A stretch of 64,000 nucleotides of DNA, from IMG/VR virus record IMGVR_UViG_3300042317_001568, positions 1-64,000 of that record; one strand, written 5' to 3'. The first letter of the stretch is position 1. Each line of letters begins with the position of its first letter. Of this stretch, positions 17,975-64,000 are shown piece after piece. Below the pieces are notes generated by a model. The model saw only the letters and a program-made list of their open reading frames with translations, did not search any database and had not been told where the DNA came from. Both the position numbers and the translations under genes were made by a program.

Positions 17975-19048
17975 ATGCCATTCAAATCTGAAAAGCAGCG
18001 TCGTTTTCTCTGGGCCTCGCATCCCGATATAGCGAAGCGGTGGGCGCACGAATACCCCGAATCAAACAAAGGCCTGCCTATGTACGCGCACAAGAAGAAA
18101 GACGAGAAAGAGGCCGCATTAACAGCAATTCACAGTTACGTGAATAAACTTAACAATTTGTTAATATTGCCACATACCGTACAAAACAAGGCTTTTTCGA
18201 AAGTTGCCAATTCAAAGCAGACATATATTGAGATTCCCCACAGCGAAAAGCCAACGTACGCTGGGGAAGAACGGGAGAAAAACCCCGAACATCGCCCAGA
18301 CTTTGATGTCACGCAATCAGGCACAGAACAGCCTAAAAAACGCCAAGAAAACGCAATTAACTCGCTTCTCAAGAAGATCGCTTTGGTCGTAGGGCCCAAC
18401 ATCAGAAAGATAAAAGAAGAGCAAGACGCTGCGCTGGAAGGCCGCGAACCCGCCTACGTGCCGACAAACGCGGACGTAAAGCGCTATCCCGTCGCGACAA
18501 CGGGAATTATGCCGCCCATGGGCTCGCAACCACAGCCACAACAGCAAGCGCCGGTCAAGCAACCGCAGTCTCGCCCTTCTGCGCCCCCTGTCGGAAACGG
18601 TAGCAGCACGCAATCTCGTCCCATTCAGTCTTTAGGCGGCTTGTCTGTAAAAAACGAACTCACCGGAAACTCGGGTTCTGCTGGCGGACGTAATCCGGGC
18701 GCAGGTATCAAAACGTCAAGCAGTCCAGCGTGGCAACGAAGCGCTGGTAAAAATGACGAAGGCGGCTTAAACGCCAAAGGTCGCGCCAGCTACAACAACG
18801 CTACGGGCGGCAATCTCAAAGCCCCCGTGACCGAGTCCAGCCCCAAAGGCGATCGGGCAAAGCGCCAGAACTCATTTTGTTCGCGGATGTGCGGTATGAA
18901 AAAACATGAGACTGGCAGCAAGACCAAGAAAGACCCCGATTCCCGCATCAATAAAGCTTTGCGTAAATGGAACTGCAAGTGCAGCAGTGTCAATGGTCTA
19001 GTTGAAATGCTGCGTAATTCGCGTTTTGCCGGCCCCCAATCCCGATAA
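17975..19048 (+). CDS. Modular putative virion protein: MPFKS-type N-terminal module plus C-terminal module resembling DUF6321
   Basis: MPFKSEKQRRFLWASHPDIAKRW; AWQRSAGKN..GGLNAKGRASY..SFCSRM..DPDSRINKALRKWNC. The family name is from memory. Confidence 0.7.
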   Translation: MPFKSEKQRRFLWASHPDIAKRWAHEYPESNKGLPMYAHKKKDEKEAALTAIHSYVNKLNNLLILPHTVQNKAFSKVANSKQTYIEIPHSEKPTYAGEEREKNPEHRPDFDVTQSGTEQPKKRQENAINSLLKKIALVVGPNIRKIKEEQDAALEGREPAYVPTNADVKRYPVATTGIMPPMGSQPQPQQQAPVKQPQSRPSAPPVGNGSSTQSRPIQSLGGLSVKNELTGNSGSAGGRNPGAGIKTSSSPAWQRSAGKNDEGGLNAKGRASYNNATGGNLKAPVTESSPKGDRAKRQNSFCSRMCGMKKHETGSKTKKDPDSRINKALRKWNCKCSSVNGLVEMLRNSRFAGPQSR

Positions 19049-19120
19049 TTTGGTAATTGTTAACAATGCCTGTTATGTTAAATAGGCAAATACGGTAGCG
19101 ATTACCCCGAGGACCGCGTC

Positions 19121-19465
19121 ATGCGTTACTGGCTGGCATTCATTCTGAGCCTATTCGGCGCCCTAAGCTGGGCTGACGAACTAATCATCTTTCACATGCC
19201 CGGCTGCCGCCCCTGCGCGCAGCTTAAGCAGGTCCTAGACGAAAACCCTGAGCTTGTTCAGGGTTTTACTGTTTCACGCATTGATATTCTGGCGGATACC
19301 CAAAGCGCTGAGATATTTCGTGTCTCGTCTGTACCCACCGTGGTGCGACTAGACGCAAAAGACCGCGAAATCGCCCGCTCGGTTGGTTTCATGAACCGAA
19401 AAGAACTCGCCCACTGGCTTGATAATCCTTCGACGACCCGCAGTTTCCGTCGAACCCGCCGCTAA
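19121..19465 (+). CDS. Exported thioredoxin-like protein
   Basis: Signal peptide, CRPC motif, cis-Pro VPT. Confidence 0.85.
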   Translation: MRYWLAFILSLFGALSWADELIIFHMPGCRPCAQLKQVLDENPELVQGFTVSRIDILADTQSAEIFRVSSVPTVVRLDAKDREIARSVGFMNRKELAHWLDNPSTTRSFRRTRR

Positions 19466-19538
19466 TTACGTGCTCGTAACTGCATGGAAAGTGAGTAGAA
19501 CTGGCTTTATGTAAACACACTCTTGTTATAGGTGACCC

Positions 19539-20456
19539 ATGCATGGACGCATTTTCACGGTACTCCTACGTACCTTTTTCTTTTTTTTAGCTATTAGCGC
19601 TGGTGTAAACATCTGCGCCGGCACTCGTGACCCCAATACGCCAGACGCCCGATACCTCGAATTCGGACAAAAGTTCCCGAATGTGGTGAGCGTCAAAGCC
19701 CTGCGTGTTGAAGGCGTTGACGATATTATGCAAATTCAGGAGCTGGATTTAAGCCCTGATAGCAAAGAAAAAGGCATCAAAGTTTCTTTCCAATTCGGCT
19801 CGGCTGTCGTCATTCGGCCCAATTGGCTTCTGACCGCGGGGCATGTCGTCAAAGGCGCGCCGCTTGTGCTGGCTGTCACAGATGACAAGTCAGAGCACAA
19901 GCTGCACAAGATCATTGTCCACCCGCGCTTCGAAGACGAGGACTTTGGCTTTCACGATCTAGCGCTGTGCTACTCGGCTAAAGCATTTGAGATGGCGTTT
20001 TATCCTGAGCTGTACACCAAGCTGGACGAGGTTGGCGCGGCTATTACTATTGCTGGCTATGGCACGACCGGGACTTTCAATACTGGCGCAACTGGCGAAG
20101 ACCACCAAAAGCGTGGCGGCCATAACAGAATAGACTCCAGCGAGCGCACTATTCTTATCTGCACGCCCAGTATCCAGCACGATAAGTTTCCACTGGAGTT
20201 CATGATCGCCCCGGGAGATTCTGGCGGCGGTATGTTTATTGGTAACAAACTAGCTGGTATTAATTCGTTCCTAATGGCCCGGGATAAGAAACCTAATGGT
20301 TCTTACACGGACGAATCGGCTTTTACGCGAATTAGTCTGTACCACGAGTGGATTGAAGAACAGATTGCTTTGCACGAACTAGCCATTGCGAGCAAAAGCA
20401 CCATGGCGCCTGACTTGGACAAGATCACGCCGATTCTTACGGGAGTTGCGCCATGA
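19539..20456 (+). CDS. Exported trypsin-like serine protease (S1)
   Basis: LTAGHV, DLAL, GDSGG catalytic triad. Confidence 0.9.
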   Translation: MHGRIFTVLLRTFFFFLAISAGVNICAGTRDPNTPDARYLEFGQKFPNVVSVKALRVEGVDDIMQIQELDLSPDSKEKGIKVSFQFGSAVVIRPNWLLTAGHVVKGAPLVLAVTDDKSEHKLHKIIVHPRFEDEDFGFHDLALCYSAKAFEMAFYPELYTKLDEVGAAITIAGYGTTGTFNTGATGEDHQKRGGHNRIDSSERTILICTPSIQHDKFPLEFMIAPGDSGGGMFIGNKLAGINSFLMARDKKPNGSYTDESAFTRISLYHEWIEEQIALHELAIASKSTMAPDLDKITPILTGVAP

Positions 20457-21091
20457 AAAAGCCCGTCAAGCAGCTCGTATACGAACTTCGGCGCTGGGTG
20501 CACGCACCTAATGCAGTTTCAGCACAGGACATGCTGGACGAGGCTGCTGACAGGCTGGAAGAGCTTGCCCACGACAGCGACAAGTTCTGGCGCATGGCTG
20601 AACGCTGCAAAGAGAACTACATGGCGGCGACAAAAGAAAATGCGCAGTTTCGCCGGGCGCTGTACAGCCAGCCAGCGTTAATTCGTTTAGACGCCCCACA
20701 AGTAGCTGATTTGAACAAACTCATTGAACTTCACAACGACGCTCGGGCTAAGAAGAGCTGGTTTCGGCCACTGCGGGCATTGACCAAAAGCGCGGCCCTG
20801 ACTGAGTACGCCCAGCGCCACGCATTCAAGATGGCCGATGGCGGCTGGCTGCGGCACTCTTCTATGGACAATGTGCTCAAACTAGGATTTACAGCAGCCG
20901 GCGAGAATATTGCGTGGGGTCAGAATTCAGAAGAAAGCGTCTTAAATTCGTGGCTGTGGTCGTACGGGCACAGGGCCAATATTCTCAGCAGCAAATACGA
21001 CAGTATCGGCTGTGGCGCACGCAAAGATAAAGCTGGTCGGTTATACTGGTGCGTAGTGTTCGGCAAGTTAAAGCCGCAGTCCGCCAGTTAA
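20453..21091 (+). CDS. CAP/SCP domain protein
   Basis: HN-x-x-R...AQRHA...H...GENIAWGQ...GHRANIL...IGCG...YWCVVFG. Confidence 0.9.
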   Translation: MKKPVKQLVYELRRWVHAPNAVSAQDMLDEAADRLEELAHDSDKFWRMAERCKENYMAATKENAQFRRALYSQPALIRLDAPQVADLNKLIELHNDARAKKSWFRPLRALTKSAALTEYAQRHAFKMADGGWLRHSSMDNVLKLGFTAAGENIAWGQNSEESVLNSWLWSYGHRANILSSKYDSIGCGARKDKAGRLYWCVVFGKLKPQSAS

Positions 21092-21203: not shown

Positions 21204-23146
21204 CCACAGCAGCAGGTATGTTCTATGGCGGCAGCGCGCTAAACAAAGCAGCCGAACTCGTACCAGACGTCCAGTTACAAGACCACCAGCAGCGCATTGC
21301 AGACCGTATCTCGGGCGATGACCCCAGACTGCTTGTGTATCACGGACTGGGCTCTGGCAAGTCCCTGTCAGCTCTGGCAGCAGCTGAGAAAGCCCGCACA
21401 GAACAGGGCGGCGAATATGGCGTCGTCGTACCAGCCAGCCTCAAGGGCAACTTCGAGAAGGAGATCGCCAAGTTCACGCGCGACTCGAACCCGGAAGTCA
21501 TGAGCTACACGGGCTTGGGCATGGGCAAGGATTTTACGAATAATCCCGACACGCTGGTGATGGACGAAGCAGCTCGGCTAAGAAATCCCACAGCCGCGAG
21601 CACATCTGCCGCTATGCGCGCAGCCCAGAAAGCCAAAAGACTGGTCCTGCTCACAGGCACGCCGATCACCAATGAGCCGAGTGATATCGCCAGCTTGCTG
21701 TCTATGCTGCACAACAAACAAATCACGCCGCAGCAATTTGATCAGCAGTTTGTAAGCGAGAAGAAAGTTCGGCCGGGTATCTTAGCGTGGTTGCGTGGCA
21801 TAAAGCCCGGTATGAAGCCAGTTATCAAGAACGAAAGCAAGCTGCGCGCATTGCTAGAGGGCAAAGTCGATTACTTACCCAGCAAAACACCTGAAGGCGT
21901 AAACGTTAACGAAGAAGTCGTGCGTGTGCCGCTGTCAGCCGAACAGCAGCGTATCCAGAAGGCTATTCGGACCAAGATTCCGCCGGGCTTTCTCTGGAAA
22001 CTGGACCAAGAGTTCCCGCTGTCGCGCGATGAGCTGGCGAAACTAAACAGCTTTATGACTGGTCTGCGCCAAGTGAGTCTAAGTACACAGCCGTTTCGAG
22101 CTGACAAAGACATGTACCGCGCGTATTCTCAGTCCAGCAAATTACAGAAAGCCATGGCAGACTTGCAGGAGACGCTCAAGAGTGATCCGCGCAAGAAGGC
22201 TATTATCTACTCTAACTTCATTGACGCTGGATTAAATCCATATGCTGCGGCGTTAGAGAAGAACAAGATTCCCCACGCGTTCTTCCACGGCGGCATGCCC
22301 GTCAAAGCGCGTCAGCAGGCACTCAAGCAGTACAACGAAGGCAAGCTCAAGGCGCTCTTGCTCGGCCCCGCAGCAGCCGAAGGTATCTCGACTAAGGGCA
22401 CCAGTCTCATTCAGCTTCTGGACCCGCACTGGAACGAAGCACGCAGTCAGCAAGCTCGTGGTCGTGGTCTGCGCTTTGACTCCCACGAGGGCCTGCCCGA
22501 AGAGCTGCGCAACGTAGCTGTCCGGCGATATCTTAGCTCGTCAGAAAATCCGGGCATTGTTGGCAAATACTTGCTGGGCAGAAAGCGTGAACGCACCGGT
22601 GACGAAGTGCTGGAAAGACTCACGGCAGAGAAAGAACAGTTTAATGACGTGTTCCGCAACTTACTCCGCGAAGTCGGCAGCGAGAAGCAAAGTGACGAAG
22701 CGCCGCCAATAGCGAAAAAAAAGAAGCCGGTACCCGCGTTCACACCTGACTTTACGCCAGAACAGCTTGAAGAACTGGGCGTCTATAACTCGCTGTACCG
22801 CGGCATTGGCCCCCGTCTGGCTAGCTTGGGCGAATGGAAACCAGAGTGGGTGAATCCTGTCGACCCCAAAGGCTGGGCGCAGTGGTACAAGCGTTATTCT
22901 GGTGGCCGGAGATTAGGCGACGAAGATGAGCGTCAAATCAAGCGCTGGGCCAATTTTAAGTCCCGTCACGGCGGCCCATTTGTTAAAAAACCCACGCCTC
23001 GCCGCGGTTGGGCGCTGCAGAACTGGGGGATTGATCCTAGCCTGCTCGTTCCCGAAGAAGAATCTGATAAAATCAAAACCATGCTGCAGAACTATGCTGT
23101 TAAACAAACGGCAAAGCATGTAGCGAATACAACGCCGGAACAGTAA
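21200..23146 (+). CDS. SF2 (SNF2-like) helicase/ATPase with an extra C-terminal domain
   Basis: HGLGSGKS, MDEAA, LLTGTP, LLDPHWN, QARGRGLR. Confidence 0.88.
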   Translation: MTTAAGMFYGGSALNKAAELVPDVQLQDHQQRIADRISGDDPRLLVYHGLGSGKSLSALAAAEKARTEQGGEYGVVVPASLKGNFEKEIAKFTRDSNPEVMSYTGLGMGKDFTNNPDTLVMDEAARLRNPTAASTSAAMRAAQKAKRLVLLTGTPITNEPSDIASLLSMLHNKQITPQQFDQQFVSEKKVRPGILAWLRGIKPGMKPVIKNESKLRALLEGKVDYLPSKTPEGVNVNEEVVRVPLSAEQQRIQKAIRTKIPPGFLWKLDQEFPLSRDELAKLNSFMTGLRQVSLSTQPFRADKDMYRAYSQSSKLQKAMADLQETLKSDPRKKAIIYSNFIDAGLNPYAAALEKNKIPHAFFHGGMPVKARQQALKQYNEGKLKALLLGPAAAEGISTKGTSLIQLLDPHWNEARSQQARGRGLRFDSHEGLPEELRNVAVRRYLSSSENPGIVGKYLLGRKRERTGDEVLERLTAEKEQFNDVFRNLLREVGSEKQSDEAPPIAKKKKPVPAFTPDFTPEQLEELGVYNSLYRGIGPRLASLGEWKPEWVNPVDPKGWAQWYKRYSGGRRLGDEDERQIKRWANFKSRHGGPFVKKPTPRRGWALQNWGIDPSLLVPEEESDKIKTMLQNYAVKQTAKHVANTTPEQ

Positions 23147-23147
23147 A

Positions 23148-41372: not shown

Positions 41373-41379
41373 GTGCCAC

Positions 41380-54384: not shown

Positions 54385-54422
54385 AGTACCGAGTTTCGAC
54401 CAATTGCCGCATGGAGGTGGCT

Positions 54423-56792
54423 GTGTACAACAAACGAGAAAAAAAGGCGTCAGTGCCCCAACTGCTGAAAATTGTGCGTAGTTTTGACCGCACAAACACG
54501 AAAACAGCGGCGATCGGCGGTCACGGCGACGACACATCGTTCGAGCAGGCTTTTTCGAATCTGGCGCATGCTTATTTGCGCGATTCTGCGCCGAAACTCC
54601 TTGACCACGAGGTTGGTTTCCAGCTTCTTGACCGAAACCGCGAAAATACCAAAGCAGTCGGCGTTTTTGCGTTTAAAGTCGGCTCAAATTGGATGTACGC
54701 CCCGGTTTTCTTTTTAAATGGCGATCTTAAGGGTCACGAGCTGCTGTATCTGAAAAATCAGGACATGTTCGTGCCGCTCAAAGAAAACTGGATTAATTAT
54801 TTACTCAACCGCAAGCCGAGCATTCTGGGCAGCGGTATTCAACGAAATTTAACGTCTCTCGGCCAACGGCAGCCTGACTTTACACAGCTTTCCCGTTCGC
54901 CCGCAAAGTTTGGTTCCGCGCAACCGACGCTCAAGGAAATGATGGCGTCCGTTATGCCGACGTTTGCCCGCACGGCGACGATGAACACCAAAGAGGCATT
55001 TGAACAGCTTGGGAAGTCTCTCCATCTGGGCACGTTTTTAAAGCAAGCGCGACTCGAAACGGTCGAAATGCTTGTGAAGCTCTGTCAGCATGCTCCGCAA
55101 GTCGCGGAGGCTCTCGACGAGTTTCACGGGCTAAATATCGTTAAAGAAGCGATTGCCGAAATCAAGGAACGTGACCGGCTGAGCAAAATTAGCAGCGTGC
55201 TGACGAAAAAGGCCGAGAAGCCGGAAGCGCAGGGCACGTTGCAGGTCATCACGTACGACCTCACGGTGCAAAAGGCTTTACCGCCAGAATACACCGAAGA
55301 AGATCAAGAAAAACTGCTTCGGGACGGCGTGCTGATTAAAGACCAGCGGGACCGCGACGCTGTGTCCATTCCGTACAACATTCAAGTCTCGCAGAAGTTC
55401 TTCAACCCGACCGAAAGCGGTCTCTACGAAGTGTTAGTCAAGCCCGGTGAGATTGAGCGGTGCTACATCGCCGTCCACCCAATGGGTCCCAGCAAGCGCG
55501 CTGACTTTGCCACTGTAGTGCGCATTGACGGTAAACCGGACTGGCTGAATACGCGACCTGATCATATTTTTTGTTTAGCGCACGTCGAAGGCGACGAGTT
55601 CGATTCTTGGTACAACGCGCTCCCTGACGCCAACAGCGTTGGTAAGGATGCGCGGTACATGGTGCTTAACAAAAACGGAGATACGTCCGTACCGTTCCGC
55701 GTGCTCAAAGAGCACGGCGAAAATTCGTACGGGACGACGACCTATGAGGTCCACATGGAAGATCATTCAAAATTTCCTCCGCGTGGAAGCATTGGCCCGT
55801 GCTGCTACTCAGACCCGTTGAATTACGACAAGTACCGCGACGGGGTCCGCGTCCATCTGAACGGTAAGAAGGGCGCTGGCTTGCGTTCCAGCATGGGCGA
55901 CATTTTCGTTCCAGAGAGTTTCAAGCTGTTAAAAGTCAGCAAGGGCGAAGATGACGACGAATTAGACGGGCAAGATACCTGCGGCTGCGGCGAAAGCGAC
56001 CCGCCAGCCCTGCAGCCCGGCAACCTGCTTGATGTGCAGTCTGTGCTTATGAACAAGCTCGGCAGCCTTGAAGTCCGGCATAACGGCTCTGACGTCTGGA
56101 TTAACAACGAGCAATTTACAACAAAGAGCGCGCTGATCTCACTGGTAAAACAGCACGGCCTGCGCGAGGCAGCCGCCCGCGAGATTCTTAGCAAAGCAGC
56201 CGCACAGCGTAAATTCGCGTGCCACGTCAAATATGCCGACCCGTACGGCGGCCCGATGATGATTCACGGCGCCCCGACTGCTCCGGCTGATCCGGGACCG
56301 GTTATGGGCGGCGAAAGCATTATGGGGACGAACATTCCAACGCAGCTTGGCATTGACGTTGGCGTTCCGGTGCCGGGCATGAGCGCGACCCAAACAGACC
56401 GCAGCGTTTACAACCCCAACACCCAGTTCGACCAAAAGGCCGTGCAGCAGGTACTCGACGCCGCCCAGTCTGGTCAGCGTGAAGTGTTTGATACGGCCAT
56501 GATCGGCACCATGTTGCGCGCCGTCCGAGACGACGGCCTTGTCGACCGGTACATGGGCGACCTGACAAAGGGTCTGGATAAGATCGGCCGTATTTTGTTT
56601 ATGTTTTACTGGCACGGTGACCGCTTTGCCGATCGTTACGGTAAGTCGGACATGCCCGAACTAGAAGACTCGTTGCGCAATGCTTTTGAAATGCTCGGCG
56701 ACGTTATTCTGTTCTTGAAGCAAAAAACAATCGAGCCGTACCCCGAAGAGTCATCGCAGGACGTCGACTTGAACGCGCCTGCTAACGTATAG
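54423..56792 (+). CDS. Large putative virion/head-morphogenesis protein
   Basis: GTG start after GGAGG; located in the head module; function not assigned. Confidence 0.75.
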   Translation: MYNKREKKASVPQLLKIVRSFDRTNTKTAAIGGHGDDTSFEQAFSNLAHAYLRDSAPKLLDHEVGFQLLDRNRENTKAVGVFAFKVGSNWMYAPVFFLNGDLKGHELLYLKNQDMFVPLKENWINYLLNRKPSILGSGIQRNLTSLGQRQPDFTQLSRSPAKFGSAQPTLKEMMASVMPTFARTATMNTKEAFEQLGKSLHLGTFLKQARLETVEMLVKLCQHAPQVAEALDEFHGLNIVKEAIAEIKERDRLSKISSVLTKKAEKPEAQGTLQVITYDLTVQKALPPEYTEEDQEKLLRDGVLIKDQRDRDAVSIPYNIQVSQKFFNPTESGLYEVLVKPGEIERCYIAVHPMGPSKRADFATVVRIDGKPDWLNTRPDHIFCLAHVEGDEFDSWYNALPDANSVGKDARYMVLNKNGDTSVPFRVLKEHGENSYGTTTYEVHMEDHSKFPPRGSIGPCCYSDPLNYDKYRDGVRVHLNGKKGAGLRSSMGDIFVPESFKLLKVSKGEDDDELDGQDTCGCGESDPPALQPGNLLDVQSVLMNKLGSLEVRHNGSDVWINNEQFTTKSALISLVKQHGLREAAAREILSKAAAQRKFACHVKYADPYGGPMMIHGAPTAPADPGPVMGGESIMGTNIPTQLGIDVGVPVPGMSATQTDRSVYNPNTQFDQKAVQQVLDAAQSGQREVFDTAMIGTMLRAVRDDGLVDRYMGDLTKGLDKIGRILFMFYWHGDRFADRYGKSDMPELEDSLRNAFEMLGDVILFLKQKTIEPYPEESSQDVDLNAPANV

Positions 56793-56801: not shown

Positions 56802-57200
56802 ATGCCCGCTACCGTATGGTCCAACGCGCAAAGCTTCTCCGTTAACTCCGGCGCCGCCACCGTCGTGCCGATTCGCGTGCCGTATCGCGGCGTCTTGCGC
56901 GGTTACAGCTTAATTCAAACCAGCGGCACAAATGCCGGGGCGACAGCCAAACTATTGTCGAGCAACCGGGAAAAAGCGCCGAATAGCACATATCCCGAGG
57001 ATTCGTTTATTGTCACGACAATGACCGTCGCGGCCAGCAGCGCTTCAACATCGCAAGAAAGTTTGAACATCGCCTATCAAAACCGCGACGGCGATCCCAG
57101 CAACGGAAAGCGGTTCCTGTATCTAAAAATTACGCCGGCTGGTTCTGGCAGCAAAGATTTTACGCTCACGGTCACAATTGAAACACCGCGGCTAAACTAA
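56802..57200 (+). CDS. Beta-rich putative structural protein
   Basis: GAGG RBS; Ser/Thr/Gly-rich beta pattern. Confidence 0.7.
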   Translation: MPATVWSNAQSFSVNSGAATVVPIRVPYRGVLRGYSLIQTSGTNAGATAKLLSSNREKAPNSTYPEDSFIVTTMTVAASSASTSQESLNIAYQNRDGDPSNGKRFLYLKITPAGSGSKDFTLTVTIETPRLN

Positions 57201-58144
57201 TGACTCAGGCGCTGTGCGACAATCTAAAGCGCGCGCCAAGCTGGCGGTGGTTGCGCGCCATGGAAATTGACGGCGGTGGCTTCAAGGCCACGAAGGCGCT
57301 CGACGGGTCTGACGGCTTTCGGTGGATTCGACGCTCGTTGCGGTTTAAGCGACGTTTTGACGCGGCGGGCAATCAAACCCCCGCTATTTACGCCGTGGTG
57401 TTGGCGGACAGGCCACTATTCTGGGCGCACTCTATCTGGGCTGACGAGAAAAGCCCCGTTCGTTGGGCGATCGAAGCCCGCATCCTTGCCGGCGAGTCTG
57501 ACGAAGCAATCGCCGAGAAGCTGGGGACAAAAGCCGACGTTATCGATGTTTACGCTAATACGTTCTTTGACGTTCGGAGCAAGTTGCAGAACATGGATTA
57601 CGTGCTGACGGTCGTATTAGCCGACGCTGTCACACGCGGATTACAAGAACGGCACTACGACCTATTGTGGAAAATGCTGGGATATTGCGGCGGCGCTCAC
57701 GTGCTGGACGCTACGATCAGCCGGTTCACAAAAATGGTTAAACCGGATAGCCCCGAACAAGTTTCCACGTTTTTCCAAGAATTTGCCGTTAATACCATGA
57801 AATACAAGGCCGCGCTGTCTGCCATGACGGTTCCGGTCAACACGCACACACAATTGCCTTTAATCGACTCTTTTGTAAAATATGTAGAGATCGAGCGTAC
57901 AACCGAAAATGCAGTAAAGGCACAATCGTCTATCGTCGAAAACATTGGGGAAATGCTAAAATCGCTTACGTTCACAGTCGGCACCAAACTAGAAGCAAAT
58001 CCGATCAAAGTGTTGCCGTATGACGATCAGGCTGCGGAATTAAGAAGTGACGAGCTGCTATCTGCGGCAGTCGGCGGTGTGGTTTTAAATGGCGCCGACA
58101 TTCAAAAATTAAACTTCCCGGAGAAGGACAATGCAGGCACTTAA
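57200..58144 (+). CDS. Hypothetical protein
   Basis: TAATG coupling. Confidence 0.75.
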   Translation: MTQALCDNLKRAPSWRWLRAMEIDGGGFKATKALDGSDGFRWIRRSLRFKRRFDAAGNQTPAIYAVVLADRPLFWAHSIWADEKSPVRWAIEARILAGESDEAIAEKLGTKADVIDVYANTFFDVRSKLQNMDYVLTVVLADAVTRGLQERHYDLLWKMLGYCGGAHVLDATISRFTKMVKPDSPEQVSTFFQEFAVNTMKYKAALSAMTVPVNTHTQLPLIDSFVKYVEIERTTENAVKAQSSIVENIGEMLKSLTFTVGTKLEANPIKVLPYDDQAAELRSDELLSAAVGGVVLNGADIQKLNFPEKDNAGT

Positions 58145-59690
58145 CAAACAAGCGGAGGCGAAGCTCATCAGCGCGATTGAACGCGCGGCTACATTCGCCA
58201 ACGAGGGCATGAGTCCTAACGACGCGATCATCAAAAGTGCCGGCGAGGCCAACGTGCCTGCCGGGCATATTAACTTGATGGTGCACGCGTACAACACGGG
58301 TCGTACGACAAAACAACGAGAAGCTGGCGAAGACACGCTGCAGAAGGCGGCCGACTTTCAATTAGCAGACGCCGACGTTGTATTAAAAGCGCTTTACCCT
58401 GAAACGGTAAAGACTTCCGCGGAAATATCGCAAAACTCGATAGTGTCGGCAGAGTATGCTGTGTCCCCCGTCGGCATGCTCCAGCGCCGGCAGGCCGAGA
58501 TGCGCAAAGCCGCGGCTGCCAAGGTAGCGCTTCCTGAAAAGACATACGTACCGCCTCCCCGCGACGAGCACGCGGCTGCCATGCGTTCGCAGAGCGAAAA
58601 GGTAGCCGCGCAGCGTGCTGCCGACGAAAAACGCCGCTTAGCTTTTATTGCGTATAACGAAGCCGCGGCTGACATGGCGAAGCTTGCCGAGTATTTCCGT
58701 CGGCCGGGCAACATGCCGTTTCAAGACGCCCTGCGCGAGGTCGGGCTGCGCTTCGGTGACAGCGGCGTGGCTGTGTTGAACAAGGTCGCCGAGGTGTACC
58801 CGCACTTCGCGAAACAAGCCAGCGCAAAAGCCAACTACTTCGGTAACGACGATGTTTACGGCCTTGTTACAAAGGTCGTAAACGGCATTGAGCGGTACAA
58901 CGATTTAAAAAGCGCTGTGCCGGAACTGAACACAAAGGTAGCGCAAAAAAAAAATCTTGAGCCCGCCCAAATTGTGACCGGGTCGGTGCTCAACGCGCTG
59001 CAGCAAAAGCCGTTGCAGCTTAAAACCGCGTACAACCCGCGTGGTGCCGGGGCGTGGAACAACGCTGGACCGCAAGACCCAGATGAAGCCGCCGCTGTAA
59101 TGGGCGCTTTAGGAATTGGCGGTGACGAGCCGCCACCTCCGCCTCCTAACGATATGCCGCGGTACGTGCCGGACTGGAATAACACAGTCAGGCGAGAAAG
59201 AGACTACGGCGACTTCCGCCTTAACAACGTTTATTCTCGCGGCGACGACTCAGTGCTGAGCTCTATCGGCGGCATGCTCGCCGGCCCGCAGCAAGCCGCG
59301 ATGGGCGCTATCGGCAAAGAGCTTTTTGATCCGGCAAAAAAAGAAAAAATGAAGCGGCAAGAGTACGAGAAGCTGACTTCACCCGACCACGAAACGGCGC
59401 TGAAAAATATCAAGGCTCAGGCCACGCTTCACGACTTGTTGTTAAATGACGACGTCGTTTCCGGGCATGATCCGAAAGAGGTCGCCGTGGCGTTTAATGA
59501 AATTGCTAACGCCGCTCCCGGCGTCGTTGACTCGCCCGCTGTGCTGCAGGCCCTCCTGCGGAAGCGATTAGAGTCTGGCCAGCTGGCTGACTTCGACGTC
59601 AAGCAACTGCTGGAAATGGACAAGCTCAAGGCCGAGCGCGACAAGCTGCGAACCGAAACCATGGAAAAGGAGCGCAACCTCGTTGCGTAA
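58131..59690 (+). CDS. Putative head-associated helical protein
   Basis: GAAGGA RBS; multiple K-x-A motifs. Confidence 0.7.
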   Translation: MQALNKQAEAKLISAIERAATFANEGMSPNDAIIKSAGEANVPAGHINLMVHAYNTGRTTKQREAGEDTLQKAADFQLADADVVLKALYPETVKTSAEISQNSIVSAEYAVSPVGMLQRRQAEMRKAAAAKVALPEKTYVPPPRDEHAAAMRSQSEKVAAQRAADEKRRLAFIAYNEAAADMAKLAEYFRRPGNMPFQDALREVGLRFGDSGVAVLNKVAEVYPHFAKQASAKANYFGNDDVYGLVTKVVNGIERYNDLKSAVPELNTKVAQKKNLEPAQIVTGSVLNALQQKPLQLKTAYNPRGAGAWNNAGPQDPDEAAAVMGALGIGGDEPPPPPPNDMPRYVPDWNNTVRRERDYGDFRLNNVYSRGDDSVLSSIGGMLAGPQQAAMGAIGKELFDPAKKEKMKRQEYEKLTSPDHETALKNIKAQATLHDLLLNDDVVSGHDPKEVAVAFNEIANAAPGVVDSPAVLQALLRKRLESGQLADFDVKQLLEMDKLKAERDKLRTETMEKERNLVA

Positions 59691-59702: not shown

Positions 59703-61181
59703 ATGAGCATGATTAAAGTAATTCAGCCGCACGCACAAAACTTTAGCGAGCCCGTAGCCGCGCTCATCAAAGTATCTAGCCGCGGAATAATCGGGTCTGA
59801 TCGGTCAGCGCTGATTAAACGTGCCGGCGCTGAGTTCGTAGATCATTTGGCCAACATCAAGTTTGCCGCGGATGAGGTGCCTGTGCATCTTATCGCCATC
59901 GGCGCCACCGAGGATTACGGCCCGAACCGCAACGGAGACGGTTTCACGCGTGACTGCTGCAAGAAGTATCACCACACGTTTGAAAAGTTTGCGCGGTTCT
60001 ATCGGGATCACGCCAACAAGAATCCGGCAAAAAGCTACGGGCTTGTAAAGGCGTCGTTTTACAACGAACCAATGCGCCGAATCGAACTGGTATGCGCTTT
60101 AAATAGCACCAAAGAAGCAGCAGAGCGTAACGGCGGTTTAGTGGCCGACAAAGAACTAGAGAAGCTGTCGAACGACCAAGAGATTCCAGTTTCGATGGCG
60201 TGCAAAATTCCATTCGACAAGTGTTCGTCGTGCGGCAACATGGCCCGCACCCGCGCCGAGTACTGCGACTCGATTGAGAATGGCGGTCACTGCAAAGCTG
60301 GCGGTTTGAAACACAACATCGGTCGGGTAATGTCTGACGGTCACATCCTGCACGCCGACAACCCTGACCCTTCGTTCTTTGATATTTCGCATGTGTTTCG
60401 TCCGGCTGACCGCATCGCGTACGTTTCCGGACAACTGCAAAAAGCTGCCTCAAGTGCCGGCTGTATGTCTGGCGCAGAGTTAGCTGAGCAAATGGGTGTA
60501 ACGCTCCCCGTATCGCTCTTAACCAACGAATTTACTAGTAAGCGGGCGCAGGCGCAGTTACAGGCTTTACAGTTACTCGCTGACACGGAGCGCACCCTGA
60601 ACCTGCGTGATCTTACGAAAGCGGCCGCGTACACCCCAACCGGTCTCTCCGCAGCCATTCAGCAGCCGATTGATTTTGAAAGCGCCCCGATTGTCGGCTC
60701 CGTTAAGCTTGCAGAGTTGCTGCGCGGCTTGGCTGACGCGGCGGTTGTCTTACCCGTGCGCGACTTCTTGATGTTAACAATTAAACAAGCTGATTTTGGG
60801 CTCGTGAACGCGGTATCATCTGCGACAATTAGCATTTTTGACCGGCTGTTGAACGAGCCAAATATTGCATCTACACTTGAAAATAACGTATACTTTCCGG
60901 CAGACGCAGCTCCGCCGGCCGTGCGTTTATGGGCCGAAAAAGTGGCGTGCACTTACAGCGTACTAGAAGATCGTATGCAAAAACAGGCTTATACAGCGGC
61001 ATTGCGCGGTGCAACGCCGCGTCATCTTGTAGAGAAGACTGCATCGGCAACGCCAGCGATAAATGCTCTTGCAAAGCACTACGCTCTCTATAAGATTGCT
61101 GCATTAACGGCAGTCACTGAGAAATATGGAAATAACTTGTTGACAGTAGGCCACTGCATACTGCAAAATTACATTACTTGA
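59703..61181 (+). CDS. Prohead (maturation) protease-like protein
   Basis: GPNRNGDGF, RDH (His), VSMAC (Ser), FFDIS-x-V-x-x-PAD; position upstream of the scaffold and capsid genes. Confidence 0.7.
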   Translation: MSMIKVIQPHAQNFSEPVAALIKVSSRGIIGSDRSALIKRAGAEFVDHLANIKFAADEVPVHLIAIGATEDYGPNRNGDGFTRDCCKKYHHTFEKFARFYRDHANKNPAKSYGLVKASFYNEPMRRIELVCALNSTKEAAERNGGLVADKELEKLSNDQEIPVSMACKIPFDKCSSCGNMARTRAEYCDSIENGGHCKAGGLKHNIGRVMSDGHILHADNPDPSFFDISHVFRPADRIAYVSGQLQKAASSAGCMSGAELAEQMGVTLPVSLLTNEFTSKRAQAQLQALQLLADTERTLNLRDLTKAAAYTPTGLSAAIQQPIDFESAPIVGSVKLAELLRGLADAAVVLPVRDFLMLTIKQADFGLVNAVSSATISIFDRLLNEPNIASTLENNVYFPADAAPPAVRLWAEKVACTYSVLEDRMQKQAYTAALRGATPRHLVEKTASATPAINALAKHYALYKIAALTAVTEKYGNNLLTVGHCILQNYIT

Positions 61182-61227: not shown

Positions 61228-62613
61228 ATGGCACGGATGCAACGTTCTCTTTTTGCTCAGTTAAACGCGTTAGCGGAAGAAATTTCGCAGGGCGCCGTCA
61301 AGGCCGCGTCGGAAAAGTCGGCTGGCCCCGTTCCTTCCGATCCGGGTGGGTATCAGGGCGCTTCGAGCCACCCCACAACGAGCATTGATAACAACGTACG
61401 AGACGCTGCGACCGGTGCGCGAGCTTCTGAGTATGAGGCTGACATCAAGAAGCAGCAGGGCCCCCTTTCAGTCGACAACGCTCCTGAGATGTCTCAAGAA
61501 GGTCGGCAGGACGAGGTTCAACTTAACATCAATACAAAGGCCACGGCTGTCGGTGAAGACCCGTCGGTTGAAAAGGATTACAAGGGCGACAAGGACGACC
61601 CGGGCACAGCTCACCCCGCCAAGACAAACGACGGCGAGAAGTACAGCTCGGTAACTTTCAAGACTGCGCGCGAAGCTTGCGGCAATCTTGGAAACGATAT
61701 CCTCGCTAACCTGATCAATTTCGGCACTGCCCGTCTTAACGCCGAGAAGGCCGCTGAAATGCCGGCCTTCATTCAGGCGAAAATGGACGAAAAAAAAGAG
61801 TCGCCCGCTAAAGAAAAAGCCGAGCACGGCAAACTGAAGGGCGACCAGCACAAGCTCGACGTCGACAACGACGGCAAGATTGAGGGTTCGGACCTCGCTT
61901 CGCTGCGCGGAGACAAAGAAGCCGCTTATAGCGCCGGTTATGAGCTGGCAGCACATCTTGGCGTAGAAAAAGAGGCTGCTGAAGCCGCCGTTCGCGAGGT
62001 GTGTGCAAACACGCTGCGCGAAGCCGACGAGATGGCCGACCTGCTCATTGGATTTTTAACAACCAAGCGTGCGAATGACGACGCGCTTGGTGATGCGTCT
62101 GAAGGCGAAGATCACGACACCGCTGGTGACGAAGACTCCGGCGCTGGCGATGCCCCTATGATGGGCGGCGCTGACGAATCCGCTGCGCTTGCCGGAGCCG
62201 AAGGTGACCCTGCCGCCGGTGGCGACATGGGCGGCATGATGGACGGCGGCATGGGCGGAGAACCGTCTGAAGACGAAGCTGTTCAAGAACTGGCGATGGC
62301 TTTAGAAGAACTCGGCATTCCGCCGGAAGCACTTCTTGAAGCTGTTCAATCTGGCGCTCTCGGCGGAGACGCCGGCGGTGCTGGTGGAATGCCCCCAGCC
62401 GGCGGCGAAATTCCTGCTGAAGCTGCTGCGCCCGGTATGGACGCTGCGCCGAAGATGGCTGCCGACCGCGCGCAAGCCCTAACTGAAGTTGGCTCTGCTG
62501 TAATCAACTTCAAGCGCTCTGGCAAGTTTCAAATCAAAGAAGCTCGTACAAAGCGTTCCCGCCAGTTGCGTGATATAATGAAGCAGCATGTAATCGAACT
62601 GGTAAACCGATAA
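61228..62613 (+). CDS. Acidic scaffold/inner-core-like protein
   Basis: AAGGAG RBS; acidic, Gly/Ala-rich; follows the protease. Confidence 0.6.
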   Translation: MARMQRSLFAQLNALAEEISQGAVKAASEKSAGPVPSDPGGYQGASSHPTTSIDNNVRDAATGARASEYEADIKKQQGPLSVDNAPEMSQEGRQDEVQLNINTKATAVGEDPSVEKDYKGDKDDPGTAHPAKTNDGEKYSSVTFKTAREACGNLGNDILANLINFGTARLNAEKAAEMPAFIQAKMDEKKESPAKEKAEHGKLKGDQHKLDVDNDGKIEGSDLASLRGDKEAAYSAGYELAAHLGVEKEAAEAAVREVCANTLREADEMADLLIGFLTTKRANDDALGDASEGEDHDTAGDEDSGAGDAPMMGGADESAALAGAEGDPAAGGDMGGMMDGGMGGEPSEDEAVQELAMALEELGIPPEALLEAVQSGALGGDAGGAGGMPPAGGEIPAEAAAPGMDAAPKMAADRAQALTEVGSAVINFKRSGKFQIKEARTKRSRQLRDIMKQHVIELVNR

Positions 62614-62627
62614 TTACGGAGGTTTTA

Positions 62628-63059
62628 ATGTCCGCTAACAACACAAATACACTTGTGCAAAAAATCATCGATTACATTGGTTATTCCGATGCCGCGATGA
62701 CAAAGGCTGCCGCATCGCTGCAGGTCCAAGAAACACAGGCGACAAAGATTGCCTCGCTGATTCCGACCGCCGTGAAGGCGTGCGTTGAAAATGAACGGAT
62801 CGAACCGCATCAAAAAGAAGCGCTTGAACAAGCCCTTCGCGACCCAGTAGCGACCATGGAGCTTGTTGTAAAACTTGCTTCGCATCGCAACTCCGCCGAA
62901 CTCGGCCGCCTCGGCCAGCCGGTTGGTCAGCAAAAGTCTGCGTCGTACGATCCGAACACAAGTCTGACGAACGGGTACGTGGGTGCCCGTGACGGCCGCG
63001 TAAAGGCGTCCGACGTGAAGTTGTTCACGGGTCTCGGTCTGAATCCGCCCACCACCTGA
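62628..63059 (+). CDS. Putative head/scaffold-associated protein
   Basis: GGAGG RBS. Confidence 0.65.
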   Translation: MSANNTNTLVQKIIDYIGYSDAAMTKAAASLQVQETQATKIASLIPTAVKACVENERIEPHQKEALEQALRDPVATMELVVKLASHRNSAELGRLGQPVGQQKSASYDPNTSLTNGYVGARDGRVKASDVKLFTGLGLNPPTT

Positions 63060-63093
63060 TCCTTAAAAACTACTTAGACATGGAGGTCTAACA

Positions 63094-63687
63094 ATGGCTG
63101 TTCCTGAGCAAATGTTTGCGCACGGTTTAGACGTCAAAAAGGGCTGGTTCGACATGGCCTCGCTCGATTATTCGGCGAAGCTTGCGACTACCGTCACGTT
63201 TGACGTAAAGCGCGGTCGCGTTGTCCACGTTAACACTAACGGTGAGTTCGTGCCGGGTGCGCACAAGACGTGCCCCGCGGTCTTCCTGCTTAACGGTTCG
63301 GACGACGCCGACGTAAGTAACCCCGGTTACAACTCGCCGATGACATCGGCGAATTTCATGCACATCGCAGTTGCGCCGACCGGCAAGATGTCCGGCCTCG
63401 TAGCGACTGGCGGTTACGAAATCTCCTCGACGGAGTTCGTGACTGCTAACACCTACACGCCCGGCGATCTGCTTTCGGTAACTACGAAAACTGGCGCTGG
63501 CAGCACCGTAGCTGCTACCGACGGTCTTCTGACGAACTACAGCGTTACGCAGTATGCGCAGCCGGTAGTCGGCGTTGTATCCAGCGGTGCTGGCAAGAAT
63601 CACAACGGGATTCAAGCCCTTTCGTTCTGGTGCGTCTATCTCCCGGGCGCGGCCAACTGGAACGGCGTACAGGCGGCTAGCGCCTAA
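63094..63687 (+). CDS. Putative capsid decoration/cement protein
   Basis: Beta-rich; directly before the capsid candidate; GGAGGT RBS. Confidence 0.55.
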   Translation: MAVPEQMFAHGLDVKKGWFDMASLDYSAKLATTVTFDVKRGRVVHVNTNGEFVPGAHKTCPAVFLLNGSDDADVSNPGYNSPMTSANFMHIAVAPTGKMSGLVATGGYEISSTEFVTANTYTPGDLLSVTTKTGAGSTVAATDGLLTNYSVTQYAQPVVGVVSSGAGKNHNGIQALSFWCVYLPGAANWNGVQAASA

Positions 63688-63718
63688 CTCTAACTAATAG
63701 AACATGGAGGTTCTTAAG

Positions 63719-64000
63719 ATGCCCACTCAGCAAGAAATCCAACTGCTCAACGAGACTCTTTTTGAGCAGCTTGATACACCCGGCATGCAGAAGCAGGCCA
63801 TTGATGCGGTTAACGACTTCACGCGCACCAAGATGCGTGAAGACGGCTTCTACCGTCGTATTATCCCGCCGCTAACCATCACCAACGACGAACTCGATCG
63901 TCAGGTTGATACGGACAAGCCGGTGAAGGTAGTCGACAAGGAGCCCGATTCCCCGGCAGCCGTGTCGATTCCGTTCGCCACGCTCCCGAGCAACTTTTAC
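63719..64000 (+). CDS. Probable major capsid protein (3'-truncated, not in the track)
   Basis: GGAGGT RBS; open frame MPTQQEIQLLNETLFEQLDTPGMQKQAIDAVNDFTRTKMREDGFYRRIIPP...; gene order protease-scaffold-decoration-capsid. Confidence 0.6.
   Translation, partial: MPTQQEIQLLNETLFEQLDTPGMQKQAIDAVNDFTRTKMREDGFYRRIIPPLTITNDELDRQVDTDKPVKVVDKEPDSPAAVSIPFATLPSNFY

What the first reader, a model, noticed from the sequence alone, without database searches (positions are those of the whole stretch)
17975..64000. K-x-A/S motifs at module boundaries: candidate protease-processed virion polyproteins
Seen: K-x-[A/S], often preceded by E or a hydrophobic residue, recurs at the edges of recognisable modules. 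Examples: NKAA-[SF2 helicase]-EKQS-[C-domain] (21200); DKQA-[2H domain]-LKAA-[DUF5661-like]-EKAA-...-VKAA (37926); EKEA...EKAA-[CWKGY module]-EKTS...VKSAA (27039); EKEAA...IKTS-[C-module] (17975); EKSA, FKTA, EKAA, DKEA, TKRA, PKMA (61228); QKSA (62628); and QKQA about 25 residues into the capsid candidate. Known: T4 gp21 and phiKZ gp175 cleave many head proteins at short motifs ending in Glu. Inference: the protease at 59703 cuts at K-x-A/S, maturing the capsid and releasing packaged enzymes and peptides from polyproteins. This would be a different specificity and would give a sequence tag for the ejected proteome. Enrichment was judged by eye.
Basis: partly seen in the sequence, partly recalled or inferred. 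Interest (0 to 1): 0.8.

Follow-up and report, generated by a model that had tools for sequence, protein, structure and literature searches.

The report
K-x-A cleavage tag of phage head protease
A short Lys-x-Ala motif is packed into the head-assembly proteins of this uncultured jumbo phage and sits between modules of a few multi-domain proteins. It is most likely the previously undescribed cutting site of the phage's own head-maturation protease.

Summary
K-x-A is the top of 1,246 gapped residue pairs in the head module at 54.4-63.1 kb (56 observed, 23.5 expected; five proteins 52 vs 19.5, z 8.5). It is not enriched in the 17.7-54.4 kb proteins (66 vs 69).

The same motif ranks first in the head modules of Salmonella phage Arash and Vibrio phage D69. 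It is also raised in phage G, in mycobacteriophage Alice, and in all 111 diverse homologues of the 59703 protein. The same scan on T4 recovers its known I/L-x-E site.

The extended logo is [L/M/I]-x-K-x-A followed by S or A, which resembles the herpesvirus assemblin site. The 59703 N-domain model matches predicted structures of annotated prohead proteases, but no solved structure and no Pfam or NCBIfam model.

Single conserved K-x-A sites, with a free middle residue, occur at:
- the helicase N-terminus;
- the capsid protein N-terminus;
- between modules of the 2H/DUF5661 protein;
- around the CWKGY peptide;
- before DUF6321.

In T4-like cyanophages the DUF6321 junction instead mostly ends in Glu.

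Cleavage itself is inferred, not shown. This is a new specificity of a known kind of system.

The parts
59703..61181 (+). Candidate head-maturation protease (492 aa). It has an N-terminal protease-fold domain (residues 1-233), a disordered linker (234-254) and a helical C-terminal domain (255-492). It carries 13 K-x-A sites.
   Evidence: Homologous to Arash gp222, phage G gp19, and the Alice gp90 and Gordonia Pupper 'capsid maturation protease' genes. AF2 models have pLDDT 86 and 93.5. BFVD fold matches are to annotated prohead proteases. H103, S164, N75/N77/D79 and three Cys (C174, C177, C188) are invariant; a fourth Cys (C197) is nearly invariant.
60441..60449 (+). K247-A-A249 in the disordered linker between the protease domain and the C-terminal domain. 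It is a candidate self-cleavage site.
   Evidence: The site is nearly invariant in 52 diverse homologues. It lies in the only segment with pLDDT below 50. Coordinates checked.
54411..56792 (+). 793-aa head-module protein of unknown role that is rich in K-x-A (13 sites). The conserved sites are at residues 31, 211, 245 and 607.
   Evidence: Orthologues show 354 sites against 157 expected.
58131..59030 (+). N-terminal 300 residues of the 519-aa protein (gene 58131-59690). All 12 of its K-x-A sites lie here, so this is a candidate long propeptide that is cut into small pieces. The C-terminal 219 residues have none.
   Evidence: Eight sites are conserved in at least 86% of 14 orthologues, with a variable middle residue.
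61228..62613 (+). 461-aa Ala/Glu-rich candidate scaffold with 9 K-x-A sites.
   Evidence: Site K and A residues are 99% and 96% conserved, against 76% and 56% for other K and A in the protein. The ESM Atlas model is largely unstructured (pLDDT 0.41).
62628..63059 (+). 143-aa head-module protein with 5 K-x-A sites, all invariant in 30 orthologues.
   Evidence: observed/expected 3.25.
63704..64000 (+). Start of the HK97-fold major capsid protein. The full gene is 313 aa and runs past the window end. It holds a single conserved site, K30-Q-A32, at 63791-63799.
   Evidence: Weak NCBIfam HK97-fold hit. The site is conserved in position in Arash and Vibrio D69 (K27-E-A29). Residues 41 to the end have 1 K-x-A against 23.2 expected over 27 orthologues.
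56802..57200 (+). 132-aa head-module protein that avoids the motif.
   Evidence: 3 K-x-A against 16.1 expected over 32 orthologues.
63094..63687 (+). 197-aa head-module protein that avoids the motif.
   Evidence: 8 against 24.7 expected over 30 orthologues.
51581..51589 (+). K19-S-A21 near the N-terminus of the 243-aa protein encoded between the RNA polymerase genes. It is a candidate short propeptide site.
   Evidence: Present in 20 of 20 orthologues, with middle residue A, Q or S.
21245..21253 (+). K16-A-A18 (context A-L-N-K-A-A-E) at the N-terminus of the SNF2-type helicase (gene 21200-23146). It is a candidate 18-residue propeptide.
   Evidence: Conserved in 93% of 28 orthologues, with eight different middle residues. 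PSSM score 3.1. The Arash virion helicase gp217 begins where residue 20 aligns.
37926..39311 (+). 461-aa multi-module protein (2H-SAK phosphoesterase plus DUF5661). K-x-A sites lie between modules at residues 37, 203, 281 and 353 (nt 38034, 38532, 38766 and 38982).
   Evidence: Pfam domains. Across 120 homologues the sites at 37 and 353 are 89% and 92% conserved with a free middle residue. The sites at 203 and 281 are retained within 5 residues in 73% and 71%. The extra NUDIX module in relatives is bracketed by K-x-A.
28140..28256 (+). The stretch E-K-A-A-R, then the CWKGY...SCRP module, then a poly-Lys tail ending in E-K-T-S, in the 27039-29225 protein. This is a candidate excised cationic peptide of about 35 residues.
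   Evidence: A K-x-A lies 0-2 residues before the Cys in 95 of 111 distinct modules, with a free middle residue. A second K-x-A follows 25-35 residues after the Cys in most of the 99 of 113 modules that have one within 20-60 residues. Homology blocks end at residue 390-399.
18710..18970 (+). I-K-T-S junction followed by the C-terminal DUF6321 module of the 17693/17975-19048 protein.
   Evidence: Pfam DUF6321 hit. In 23 distinct contexts the module is preceded within 1-3 residues by K-x-A (15), K-x-S (4), K-x-G (2) or nothing (2), whatever lies upstream.

Best explanation
The window is the first 64 kb of a roughly 205-kb uncultured jumbo phage. The phage carries a multisubunit RNA polymerase of the kind found in virions of its relative Arash. 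The gene at 59703 encodes its head-maturation serine protease.

This protease belongs to a very large, experimentally uncharacterised family. The family includes phage G gp19, the N-terminal domain of cluster-C mycobacteriophage gp90, and Arash gp222.

I propose that the protease recognises [L/M/I]-x-K-x-A and cuts after the Ala, before a small residue (Ser, Ala or Gly).

Proposed events inside the prohead:
1. The protease cuts itself free of its helical C-terminal domain at K247-A-A249.
2. It chops that domain, the scaffold-like 461-aa protein, the 143-aa protein and the 300-residue propeptide of the 519-aa protein into small fragments.
3. It removes about 32 residues from the capsid protein.
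4. It removes about 20-residue N-terminal leaders from some packaged proteins (the helicase and the 243-aa protein).
5. It separates the modules of a few mosaic proteins: 2H / NUDIX / DUF5661, the CWKGY-polyLys peptide, and DUF6321.

Proteins that must stay intact have lost the motif.

Shown here: the motif statistics, their replication in other phages, site conservation, the fold match and the gene context.
Inferred: that the motif is cut, which bond is cut, which protease cuts it, and that the mosaic proteins are packaged.
For: 1. K-x-A is the single top residue pair in the head module (z 6.7; z 8.5 for five proteins). Neighbouring patterns are flat.
2. The signal replicates independently. 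K-x-A ranks first in Arash (46 vs 21) and Vibrio D69 (51 vs 22), second in phage G and fifth in Alice. All 111 representatives of the protease family at 50% identity or less carry 8-19 sites against 3.5 expected. The ratio is 4.5-fold in the poorly conserved C-terminal half.
3. The method is validated. The same scan on T4 head genes returns I-x-E first and L-x-E second, which is the known gp21 site.
4. In the 519-, 461- and 143-aa proteins, site K and A residues are more conserved than other K and A, while the middle residue varies freely.
5. The motif is avoided in the mature capsid protein (1 vs 23.2) and in three small head proteins.
6. The logo from 169 sites in five genomes is hydrophobic at K-2 (p 6e-20), E/T/V at K-1, and S (41 vs 11) or A after the Ala. 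This is close to the herpesvirus assemblin site (V/L/I)-x-A|S, which I cite from established knowledge.
7. A PSSM trained only on the four other genomes finds 16 sites in the window's head module against 1.5 expected (z 11). It finds 10 against 3.9 (z 3.2) in the 17.7-54.4 kb proteins.
8. The N-domain model (pLDDT 93.5) matches 47 BFVD models at E <= 1e-3. Most are named prohead protease. H103 and S164 are invariant. The gene lies between portal and capsid genes in all relatives examined.
9. Module junctions carry conserved K-x-A sites.
10. The junction residue tracks the resident protease type. Before DUF6321 it is K-x-A/S/G in this clade. In 8 of 9 sampled T4-like cyanophages, whose gp21-type protease cuts after Glu (established knowledge, not tested here), it ends in Glu; three of these are exact [L/I]-x-E. 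Two small phages encode the module alone, starting M-A-K-[S/T]-P-A-W.
Against: - No proteomic or biochemical datum shows cleavage at any K-x-A. The only virion mass spectrometry for a relative (Arash) reported no processing, and its supplement holds no peptide list.
- Foldseek against solved structures found nothing, not even T4 gp21 or the herpes assemblins. Pfam and NCBIfam protease models do not hit.
- Several conserved K-x-A sites lie inside the folded protease domain (residues 39, 53, 95, 137). These could be structural rather than cleaved.
- The 17.7-54.4 kb proteins show no overall enrichment.
- One T4-like cyanophage (P-RSM4) has K-A-A before DUF6321. S-CAM9 has both I-D-E and K-S-A.
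- Orthologue counts are not phylogenetically independent.
Confidence: 0.66

Rival explanations
1. The motif is a genuine protease site in head and scaffold proteins. However, the K-x-A sites at module boundaries of the 18-47 kb proteins are only conserved linker or module-edge residues. Those proteins are not packaged and are never cut.
For: There is no enrichment in these proteins. The neighbouring genes are a mixed set of PhoH, glycosyltransferase, actin-like protein and secreted protease. No virion evidence exists for the 37926 or 27039 proteins, and neither has an Arash homologue. P-RSM4 keeps K-A-A before DUF6321 although it has a T4-type head.
Against: The flanks match the head-site logo: PSSM-positive sites number 10 against 3.9 expected. 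The middle residue is free at conserved junction sites. The same junction precedes DUF6321 behind unrelated upstream modules. The junction changes to Glu in most T4-like cyanophages. The helicase homologue is abundant in Arash virions.
Confidence: 0.2
2. K-x-A is an uncut docking or targeting motif, for example for binding the capsid interior, the scaffold or the protease.
For: Enrichment and conservation alone do not distinguish binding from cutting. Some sites sit within helices of the protease C-terminal domain.
Against: A strong preference for a small residue right after the Ala, and the exclusion of G, P and D at the middle position, are typical of a protease subsite pattern. The motif is purged from mature shell proteins. 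It marks N-terminal leaders and inter-module linkers. T4's cleavage motif shows the same kind of enrichment.
Confidence: 0.08
3. A different protease makes the cuts, and cuts after the Lys. Candidates are the trypsin-like protein at 19539, the matrixin at 41347, or a host enzyme.
For: The window encodes a trypsin-family protein with an intact H/D/S triad (Pfam 59.5 bits) and an M10 metalloprotease.
Against: The trypsin-like protein has an N-terminal signal or membrane segment and lacks the Asp-189 specificity residue. R-x-A is not enriched. The motif tracks the 59703 family across phages of Bacillus, Mycobacterium, Vibrio and Salmonella, which argues against a host enzyme. The matrixin is fused to a peptidoglycan-binding domain, which suggests a cell-wall role.
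Confidence: 0.04
4. The excess is a by-product of Lys/Ala-rich helical composition or of a DNA-level motif.
For: The enriched proteins are Ala-rich (12-17%) and partly helical.
Against: The shuffles preserve composition. A-x-K, K-A and K-x-x-A are flat. The DNA pattern is in-frame only. The motif recurs in phages from a wide range of hosts (Bacillus, Mycobacterium, Vibrio, Salmonella).
Confidence: 0.02

Closest known systems
T4 gp21 and phiKZ gp175 / SPN3US gp245 prohead proteases with their multi-site cleavage motifs
   Same: The protease is encoded in the head module. Its short motif is repeated many times in scaffold, core and propeptide regions and in the protease's own tail. Packaged proteins carry N-terminal propeptides (PMC5694885, PMC10052503). 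My scan recovers T4's motif in the same way as K-x-A here.
   Different: Those enzymes cut after Glu (L/I-x-E, S/A/G-x-E, A-x-E). Here the motif is K-x-A with Ala at the inferred P1 position. The protease does not hit the S77 or S78 sequence models.
Herpesvirus assemblin (MEROPS S21), site (V/L/I)-x-A|S
   Same: Ala at the inferred P1 and Ser or Ala after it. The enzyme is a self-cleaving protease fused to a scaffold-like C-terminal region. Phage prohead proteases share its fold (Cheng et al. 2004, cited in PMC10052503).
   Different: Lys rather than a hydrophobic residue occupies P3, and the hydrophobic residue is shifted to P5. No detectable Foldseek match to solved assemblin structures.
Phage G gp19, cluster-C mycobacteriophage gp90 (Alice) and Gordonia Pupper gp94 'capsid maturation protease'
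   Same: Direct sequence homologues (26-32% identity over the protease domain). They occupy the same place between portal and capsid genes, and K-x-A is raised in them too.
   Different: No cleavage motif has been reported for them in the papers I could search. Alice fuses the domain to a 1,500-aa protein.
Polyvalent proteins of phages and conjugative elements (Iyer et al. 2017, PMC5512222)
   Same: These are mosaic proteins of shuffled effector modules, including 2H phosphoesterase. They are predicted to be packaged with the DNA and sometimes processed.
   Different: That work proposed self-processing by an embedded zincin-like peptidase domain. Here the modules are delimited by the motif of the head-maturation protease, and no embedded peptidase is present.

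Membership tests
Prohead (capsid maturation) serine proteases, assemblin-like fold (T4 gp21 / HK97 gp4 type) | The gene lies in the head-morphogenesis module, between portal and major capsid protein and next to a scaffold. | tested here: met
   Window order: 59703, then the scaffold-like 61228, then the capsid gene at 63704. The placement is the same in Arash, D69, phage G and Alice.
Prohead (capsid maturation) serine proteases, assemblin-like fold (T4 gp21 / HK97 gp4 type) | Three-dimensional fold shared with known prohead proteases. | tested here: inconclusive
   The N-domain model (pLDDT 93.5) matches 47 BFVD predicted structures at E <= 1e-3, mostly named prohead protease, COG3740 or DUF2213, with TM 0.36-0.67. 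No solved structure matches at E < 0.2.
Prohead (capsid maturation) serine proteases, assemblin-like fold (T4 gp21 / HK97 gp4 type) | Match to curated sequence models (Pfam Peptidase_S77 / S78, NCBIfam). | tested here: not met
   No Pfam or NCBIfam protease hit at E <= 0.1. The only PHROG hit is to an unnamed family.
Prohead (capsid maturation) serine proteases, assemblin-like fold (T4 gp21 / HK97 gp4 type) | Conserved catalytic Ser and His. | tested here: inconclusive
   H103, S164 and S229 are invariant across 50 sequences including phage G, Alice and Arash.
Prohead (capsid maturation) serine proteases, assemblin-like fold (T4 gp21 / HK97 gp4 type) | Demonstrated proteolysis of head proteins. 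| not testable with these tools
   Needs virion N-terminomics or a co-expression assay.
Glu-specific giant-phage head proteases (T4 L/I-x-E; phiKZ S/A/G-x-E; SPN3US A-x-E) | A motif ending in Glu is enriched in head proteins. | tested here: not met
   No x-E pair with a one-residue gap appears among the top pairs in the window's head module, where K-x-A is first. The T4 control shows I-x-E and L-x-E.
Phage G gp19 / cluster-C actinophage capsid maturation protease family | Significant sequence homology over the protease domain. | tested here: met
   tblastn E 2e-11 to phage G, 8e-7 to Alice-type phages and 1e-30 to Arash. The motifs N-x-N-G-D-x-F, H-x-N, V-S-M and C-x-x-C are shared and invariant.
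Polyvalent proteins (Iyer et al. 2017) | Several unrelated effector domains in one polypeptide, with module shuffling among relatives. | tested here: met
   The 37926 protein has 2H-SAK plus DUF5661. Relatives add a NUDIX or kinase module. The 27039 and 17693 families swap the CWKGY and DUF6321 modules.
Polyvalent proteins (Iyer et al. 2017) | Packaged in the capsid and delivered with the DNA. | not testable with these tools
   Only the helicase has a virion-detected homologue (Arash gp217).

The most novel reading that the evidence does not exclude
A very large, uncharacterised family of prohead proteases has a Lys-P3 / Ala-P1 specificity. The family has at least 2,600 clusters at 50% identity and spans uncultured jumbo phages, phage G and cluster-C mycobacteriophages. 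Besides maturing the head, these proteases dissect packaged 'Swiss-army-knife' polyproteins into separate effector enzymes and small cationic peptides.

The junction motif is exchanged when a module moves to a phage with a different head protease: K-x-A here, and Glu in T4-like cyanophages. The motif would then be a readable tag for the processed, ejected proteome in thousands of uncultivated phages.
Probability: 0.45. Interest if true: 0.78.

Novelty: new variant of a known kind. Interest (0 to 1): 0.64.

Why it matters
Head-maturation proteases with repeated short cleavage motifs are established for T4 and phiKZ-like phages, and every described motif ends in Glu. A K-x-A specificity would define the substrate rule for a separate and very abundant protease family. 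That family includes cultivable models such as phage G, Bxz1/Alice-type mycobacteriophages, Arash and Vibrio D69.

The rule would let mature ends of capsid, scaffold and internal proteins be predicted from sequence alone. It would also link the 'polyvalent protein' idea to a concrete processing enzyme. Because the motif appears to switch with the resident protease type at the same module junction, it offers a comparative way to recognise virion-delivered effector modules in metagenomic phage genomes. All of this can be tested directly with existing phages and standard mass spectrometry.

Tried and rejected
- **Nearest phage by DNA.** A megablast of the head region against GenBank phages found nothing. 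Relatives were reached only at the protein level.
- **Naming the head proteins.** Pfam, NCBIfam, PHROGs and PDB sequence searches did not name the 793-, 519-, 461-, 143- and 197-aa head proteins. The ESM Atlas gave no usable lead for the 793- and 461-aa proteins. A tblastn of the 793-aa protein found no phage match.
- **Fold search against solved structures.** Foldseek of both models against the PDB gave only chance-level hits. I therefore do not claim a solved-structure relative.
- **Trypsin-like protease as the cutter.** The protein at 19539 was considered and set aside. It has a signal or membrane segment and no Asp-189 equivalent, and R-x-A is not enriched.
- **Composition and DNA-motif artefacts.** Both were tested and rejected.
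- **N-terminal enrichment.** K-x-A within the first 50 residues of the 17.7-54.4 kb proteins was only judged informally, at about 15 sites against about 10 expected. That is not significant, and I do not use it.
- **NUDIX bracket control.** The downstream K-x-A bracket of the NUDIX module was no more frequent than control patterns in the wide window I used. Only the fixed spacing (-42 and +94) is noteworthy, and it may reflect one ancestral insertion.
- **Related loci.** Scans seeded with the 27039 and 39577 proteins returned almost only identical contigs.
- **Literature.** Searches for a K-x-A specificity, or for cleavage data on phage G, Arash or cluster-C phages, found none. The Arash supplement holds gene tables only.
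- **Tool restriction.** I rebuilt it without them.

Full report
**What the window is.**
The window is the first 64 kb of IMG/VR contig 3300042317_001568 (205 kb). Genes lie almost entirely on the + strand. There are seven tRNAs and a tmRNA at 5.5-10.3 kb, and one further tRNA at 33.4 kb.

Two large genes, 47108-51511 and 52474-54384, match phage multisubunit RNA polymerase families. Megablast finds no relative among GenBank phages.

At the protein level the nearest isolates are the 'orphan' Salmonella phage Arash and three Vibrio phages (D69, D181, D148). Arash virions contain RNA polymerase subunits and a helicase by mass spectrometry (PMC10585845).

**Checking the observation.**
- I translated a non-overlapping gene set and compared K-x-[AS] counts with shuffles of each protein. 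Excess is confined to five neighbouring genes: 54411, 58131, 59703, 61228 and 62628.
In the head module K-x-A is first of 1,246 pairs (56 vs 23.5, z 6.7; the next has z 4.0). In the 17.7-54.4 kb proteins it is not among the leaders.
- For the five proteins together the count is 52 vs 19.5 (z 8.5). A-x-K, K-A, K-x-x-A, R-x-A and K-x-G are flat, and K-x-S is marginal.
- In the 17.7-54.4 kb proteins K-x-A is 66 vs 69.4, and K-x-S is depleted.
- The DNA pattern is in-frame only (52 vs 9 and 5) and uses all synonymous codons.

The motif is therefore real and protein-level, but it is enriched only in the head module.

**Replication and a positive control.**
- The same scan on the head module of Arash puts K-x-A first (46 vs 21) and L-x-K second.
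- Vibrio D69 also has it first (51 vs 22.3). Phage G has it second, concentrated in gp19 and gp21. Mycobacteriophage Alice has it fifth, concentrated in gp90.
- An exhaustive search found 2,608 clusters at 50% identity related to the 59703 protein. All 111 full-length representatives carry 8-19 K-x-A against 3.5 expected. The ratio is 4.5-fold in the weakly conserved C-terminal half.
- Applied to T4 genes 20-24, the scan returns I-x-E first and L-x-E second in the core proteins. That is the established gp21 site (motif as reviewed in PMC5694885).

**Conservation and avoidance.**
I fetched 46 related contigs at 60-70% identity and built orthologue sets.

| Protein | K-x-A observed / expected across orthologues |
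|---|---|
| 793-aa | 2.3 |
| 519-aa | 2.4 |
| Protease candidate (492 aa) | 2.95 |
| 461-aa | 1.8 |
| 143-aa | 3.25 |
| 131-aa protein just past the window | 2.4 |
| 132-aa | 0.19 |
| 197-aa | 0.32 |
| 137-aa | 0.06 |

- In the 519-, 461- and 143-aa proteins the K and A of sites are more conserved than other K and A, while the middle residue varies widely.
- All twelve sites of the 519-aa protein lie in its first 300 residues.
- The capsid protein has a weak HK97-fold hit. It has one invariant site at residues 30-32, matched in position by K27-E-A29 in Arash and D69. Its remaining sequence has 1 site against 23.2 expected over 27 orthologues.
- These orthologue counts are not phylogenetically independent, so I treat them as supporting evidence.

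**The extended motif.**
From 169 sites in five genomes:
- K-2 is L/M/I (hydrophobic in 98 of 169, p 6e-20).
- K-1 favours E/T/V.
- The middle residue avoids G, P and D.
- The residue after Ala is Ser (41 vs 11) or Ala.

A matrix trained only on the four non-window genomes finds 16 sites in the window's head module against 1.5 expected (z 11). It finds 10 against 3.9 in the 17.7-54.4 kb proteins (z 3.2).

Ala followed by Ser or Ala resembles the herpesvirus assemblin site (established knowledge). That resemblance is my only basis for placing the cut after the Ala.

**The enzyme.**
- Sequence models do not name the 59703 protein.
- AF2 gives a confident two-domain model. Its only disordered stretch, residues 234-254, contains the nearly invariant K247-A-A249.
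- The N-domain model (pLDDT 93.5) matches nothing in the PDB.
- It does match 47 BFVD models at E <= 1e-3. Most are annotated prohead protease. Phage G gp19 and uncharacterised proteins of Gordonia Pupper, PaBG and phiRSL1 are among the hits.
- H103, S164 and the N-x-N-G-D motif are invariant, as are three Cys; a fourth Cys is nearly invariant.
- In every relative examined the gene lies between the portal and capsid genes. A 2024 preprint lists phage G gp19 as a head maturation protease without cleavage data.
- Two other protease-like genes exist. The trypsin-like protein at 19539 has a signal or membrane segment and no Asp-189 equivalent. The matrixin at 41347 is fused to a peptidoglycan-binding domain. 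Neither fits as the maturation enzyme.

**The polyprotein idea.**
Enrichment fails in the 17.7-54.4 kb proteins, but specific sites hold up.

- *Helicase (21200).* A-L-N-K16-A-A18-E is kept in 93% of 28 orthologues with eight different middle residues. The homologous Arash virion helicase starts where residue 20 aligns.
- *243-aa protein.* It has an invariant K19-x-A21.
- *37926 protein (2H-SAK plus DUF5661).* In 120 homologues the sites at 37 and 353 are 89% and 92% conserved with free middle residues. The sites near 203 and 281 are retained within five residues in about 72%. Relatives with an extra NUDIX module carry K-x-A at fixed distances on both sides. My downstream control was weak, and one insertion event may explain the pattern.
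- *27039 family.* The family is mosaic. Its CWxGY...SCRP-polyLys module is preceded by K-x-A in 95 of 111 distinct copies and followed by E-K-K-A.

**A natural swap.**
DUF6321 is common in marine phages. In 8 of 9 sampled T4-like cyanophages the residue before the module is Glu. The contexts are V-Q-N-E, V-T-N-E, L-P-E, I-T-E, I-D-E and L-T-T-E. One phage has K-A-A. T4-type proteases cut after Glu; this is established knowledge, and I did not examine the cyanophage proteases themselves.

Two small phages encode the module alone, beginning M-A-K-[S/T]-P-A-W.

The junction thus appears to follow the resident protease type. That is what a cleavage site would do. The sample is small.

**Comparison with what is known, and verdict.**
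Multi-site processing by a head protease is known for T4, phiKZ and SPN3US, always after Glu (PMC5694885, PMC10052503). Polyvalent proteins were proposed to be processed by embedded peptidases (PMC5512222). I found no report of a K-x-A specificity.

I conclude that this is a new specificity of a known kind of system, with an interesting extension to mosaic proteins. Cleavage, the scissile bond, and packaging of the mosaic proteins remain inferences.

Noticed in passing
window 59703-61181 (homologues P0126, P0149 and others): Many homologues of the protease are 850-1,300 aa long. They carry one or two inteins (Hint plus LAGLIDADG domains) inserted near residue 168-172, next to invariant S164/D172/C174, and near residue 74, next to invariant N75/N77/D79. 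Inteins usually sit at functional sites.
   Followed up: partly
window 60222-60293 (protease residues 174-197): Three invariant cysteines (C174, C177, C188) and a nearly invariant fourth (C197) form what looks like a zinc-ribbon insertion inside the protease domain. This would be unusual for prohead proteases.
   Followed up: no
window 35508-36542 (+): Full-length match to Pfam Volactin (E 5.5e-61), an actin-like protein family. This is a phage-encoded actin homologue.
   Followed up: no
window 28152-28256 (+): A module of about 35 residues, CWKGYEPVPGK.PYS..SCRP followed by a poly-Lys tail, is shared by more than 100 mosaic proteins. A related CWxGY module occurs in the gp114 family of T4-like cyanophages. 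It may be a small cationic DNA-binding peptide.
   Followed up: partly
window 19539-21091 (+): A trypsin-family protease with an N-terminal hydrophobic signal-like segment is followed by a CAP (cysteine-rich secretory protein) domain protein. This is an odd secreted pair for a phage.
   Followed up: partly
window 41347-42198 (+): A matrixin (Peptidase_M10, E 1.7e-19) is fused to a peptidoglycan-binding domain. It may be a cell-wall-directed enzyme.
   Followed up: no
window 5531-10269 and 33382-33454: A cluster of six tRNAs plus a tmRNA (tag peptide GAHAPALAA), and a separate tRNA-Asn.
   Followed up: no
window 47108-51511 and 52474-54384 (+): RNA polymerase beta/beta'-like sequences are encoded as one 1,467-aa protein and one 636-aa protein, separated by a 243-aa gene. 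The Arash homologues are abundant in virions, so this is probably a virion RNA polymerase.
   Followed up: partly
window 17693-54384 (39 proteins): K-x-S is under-represented (26 vs 41.5 expected, z -2.7). I have no explanation.
   Followed up: no
   Followed up: no
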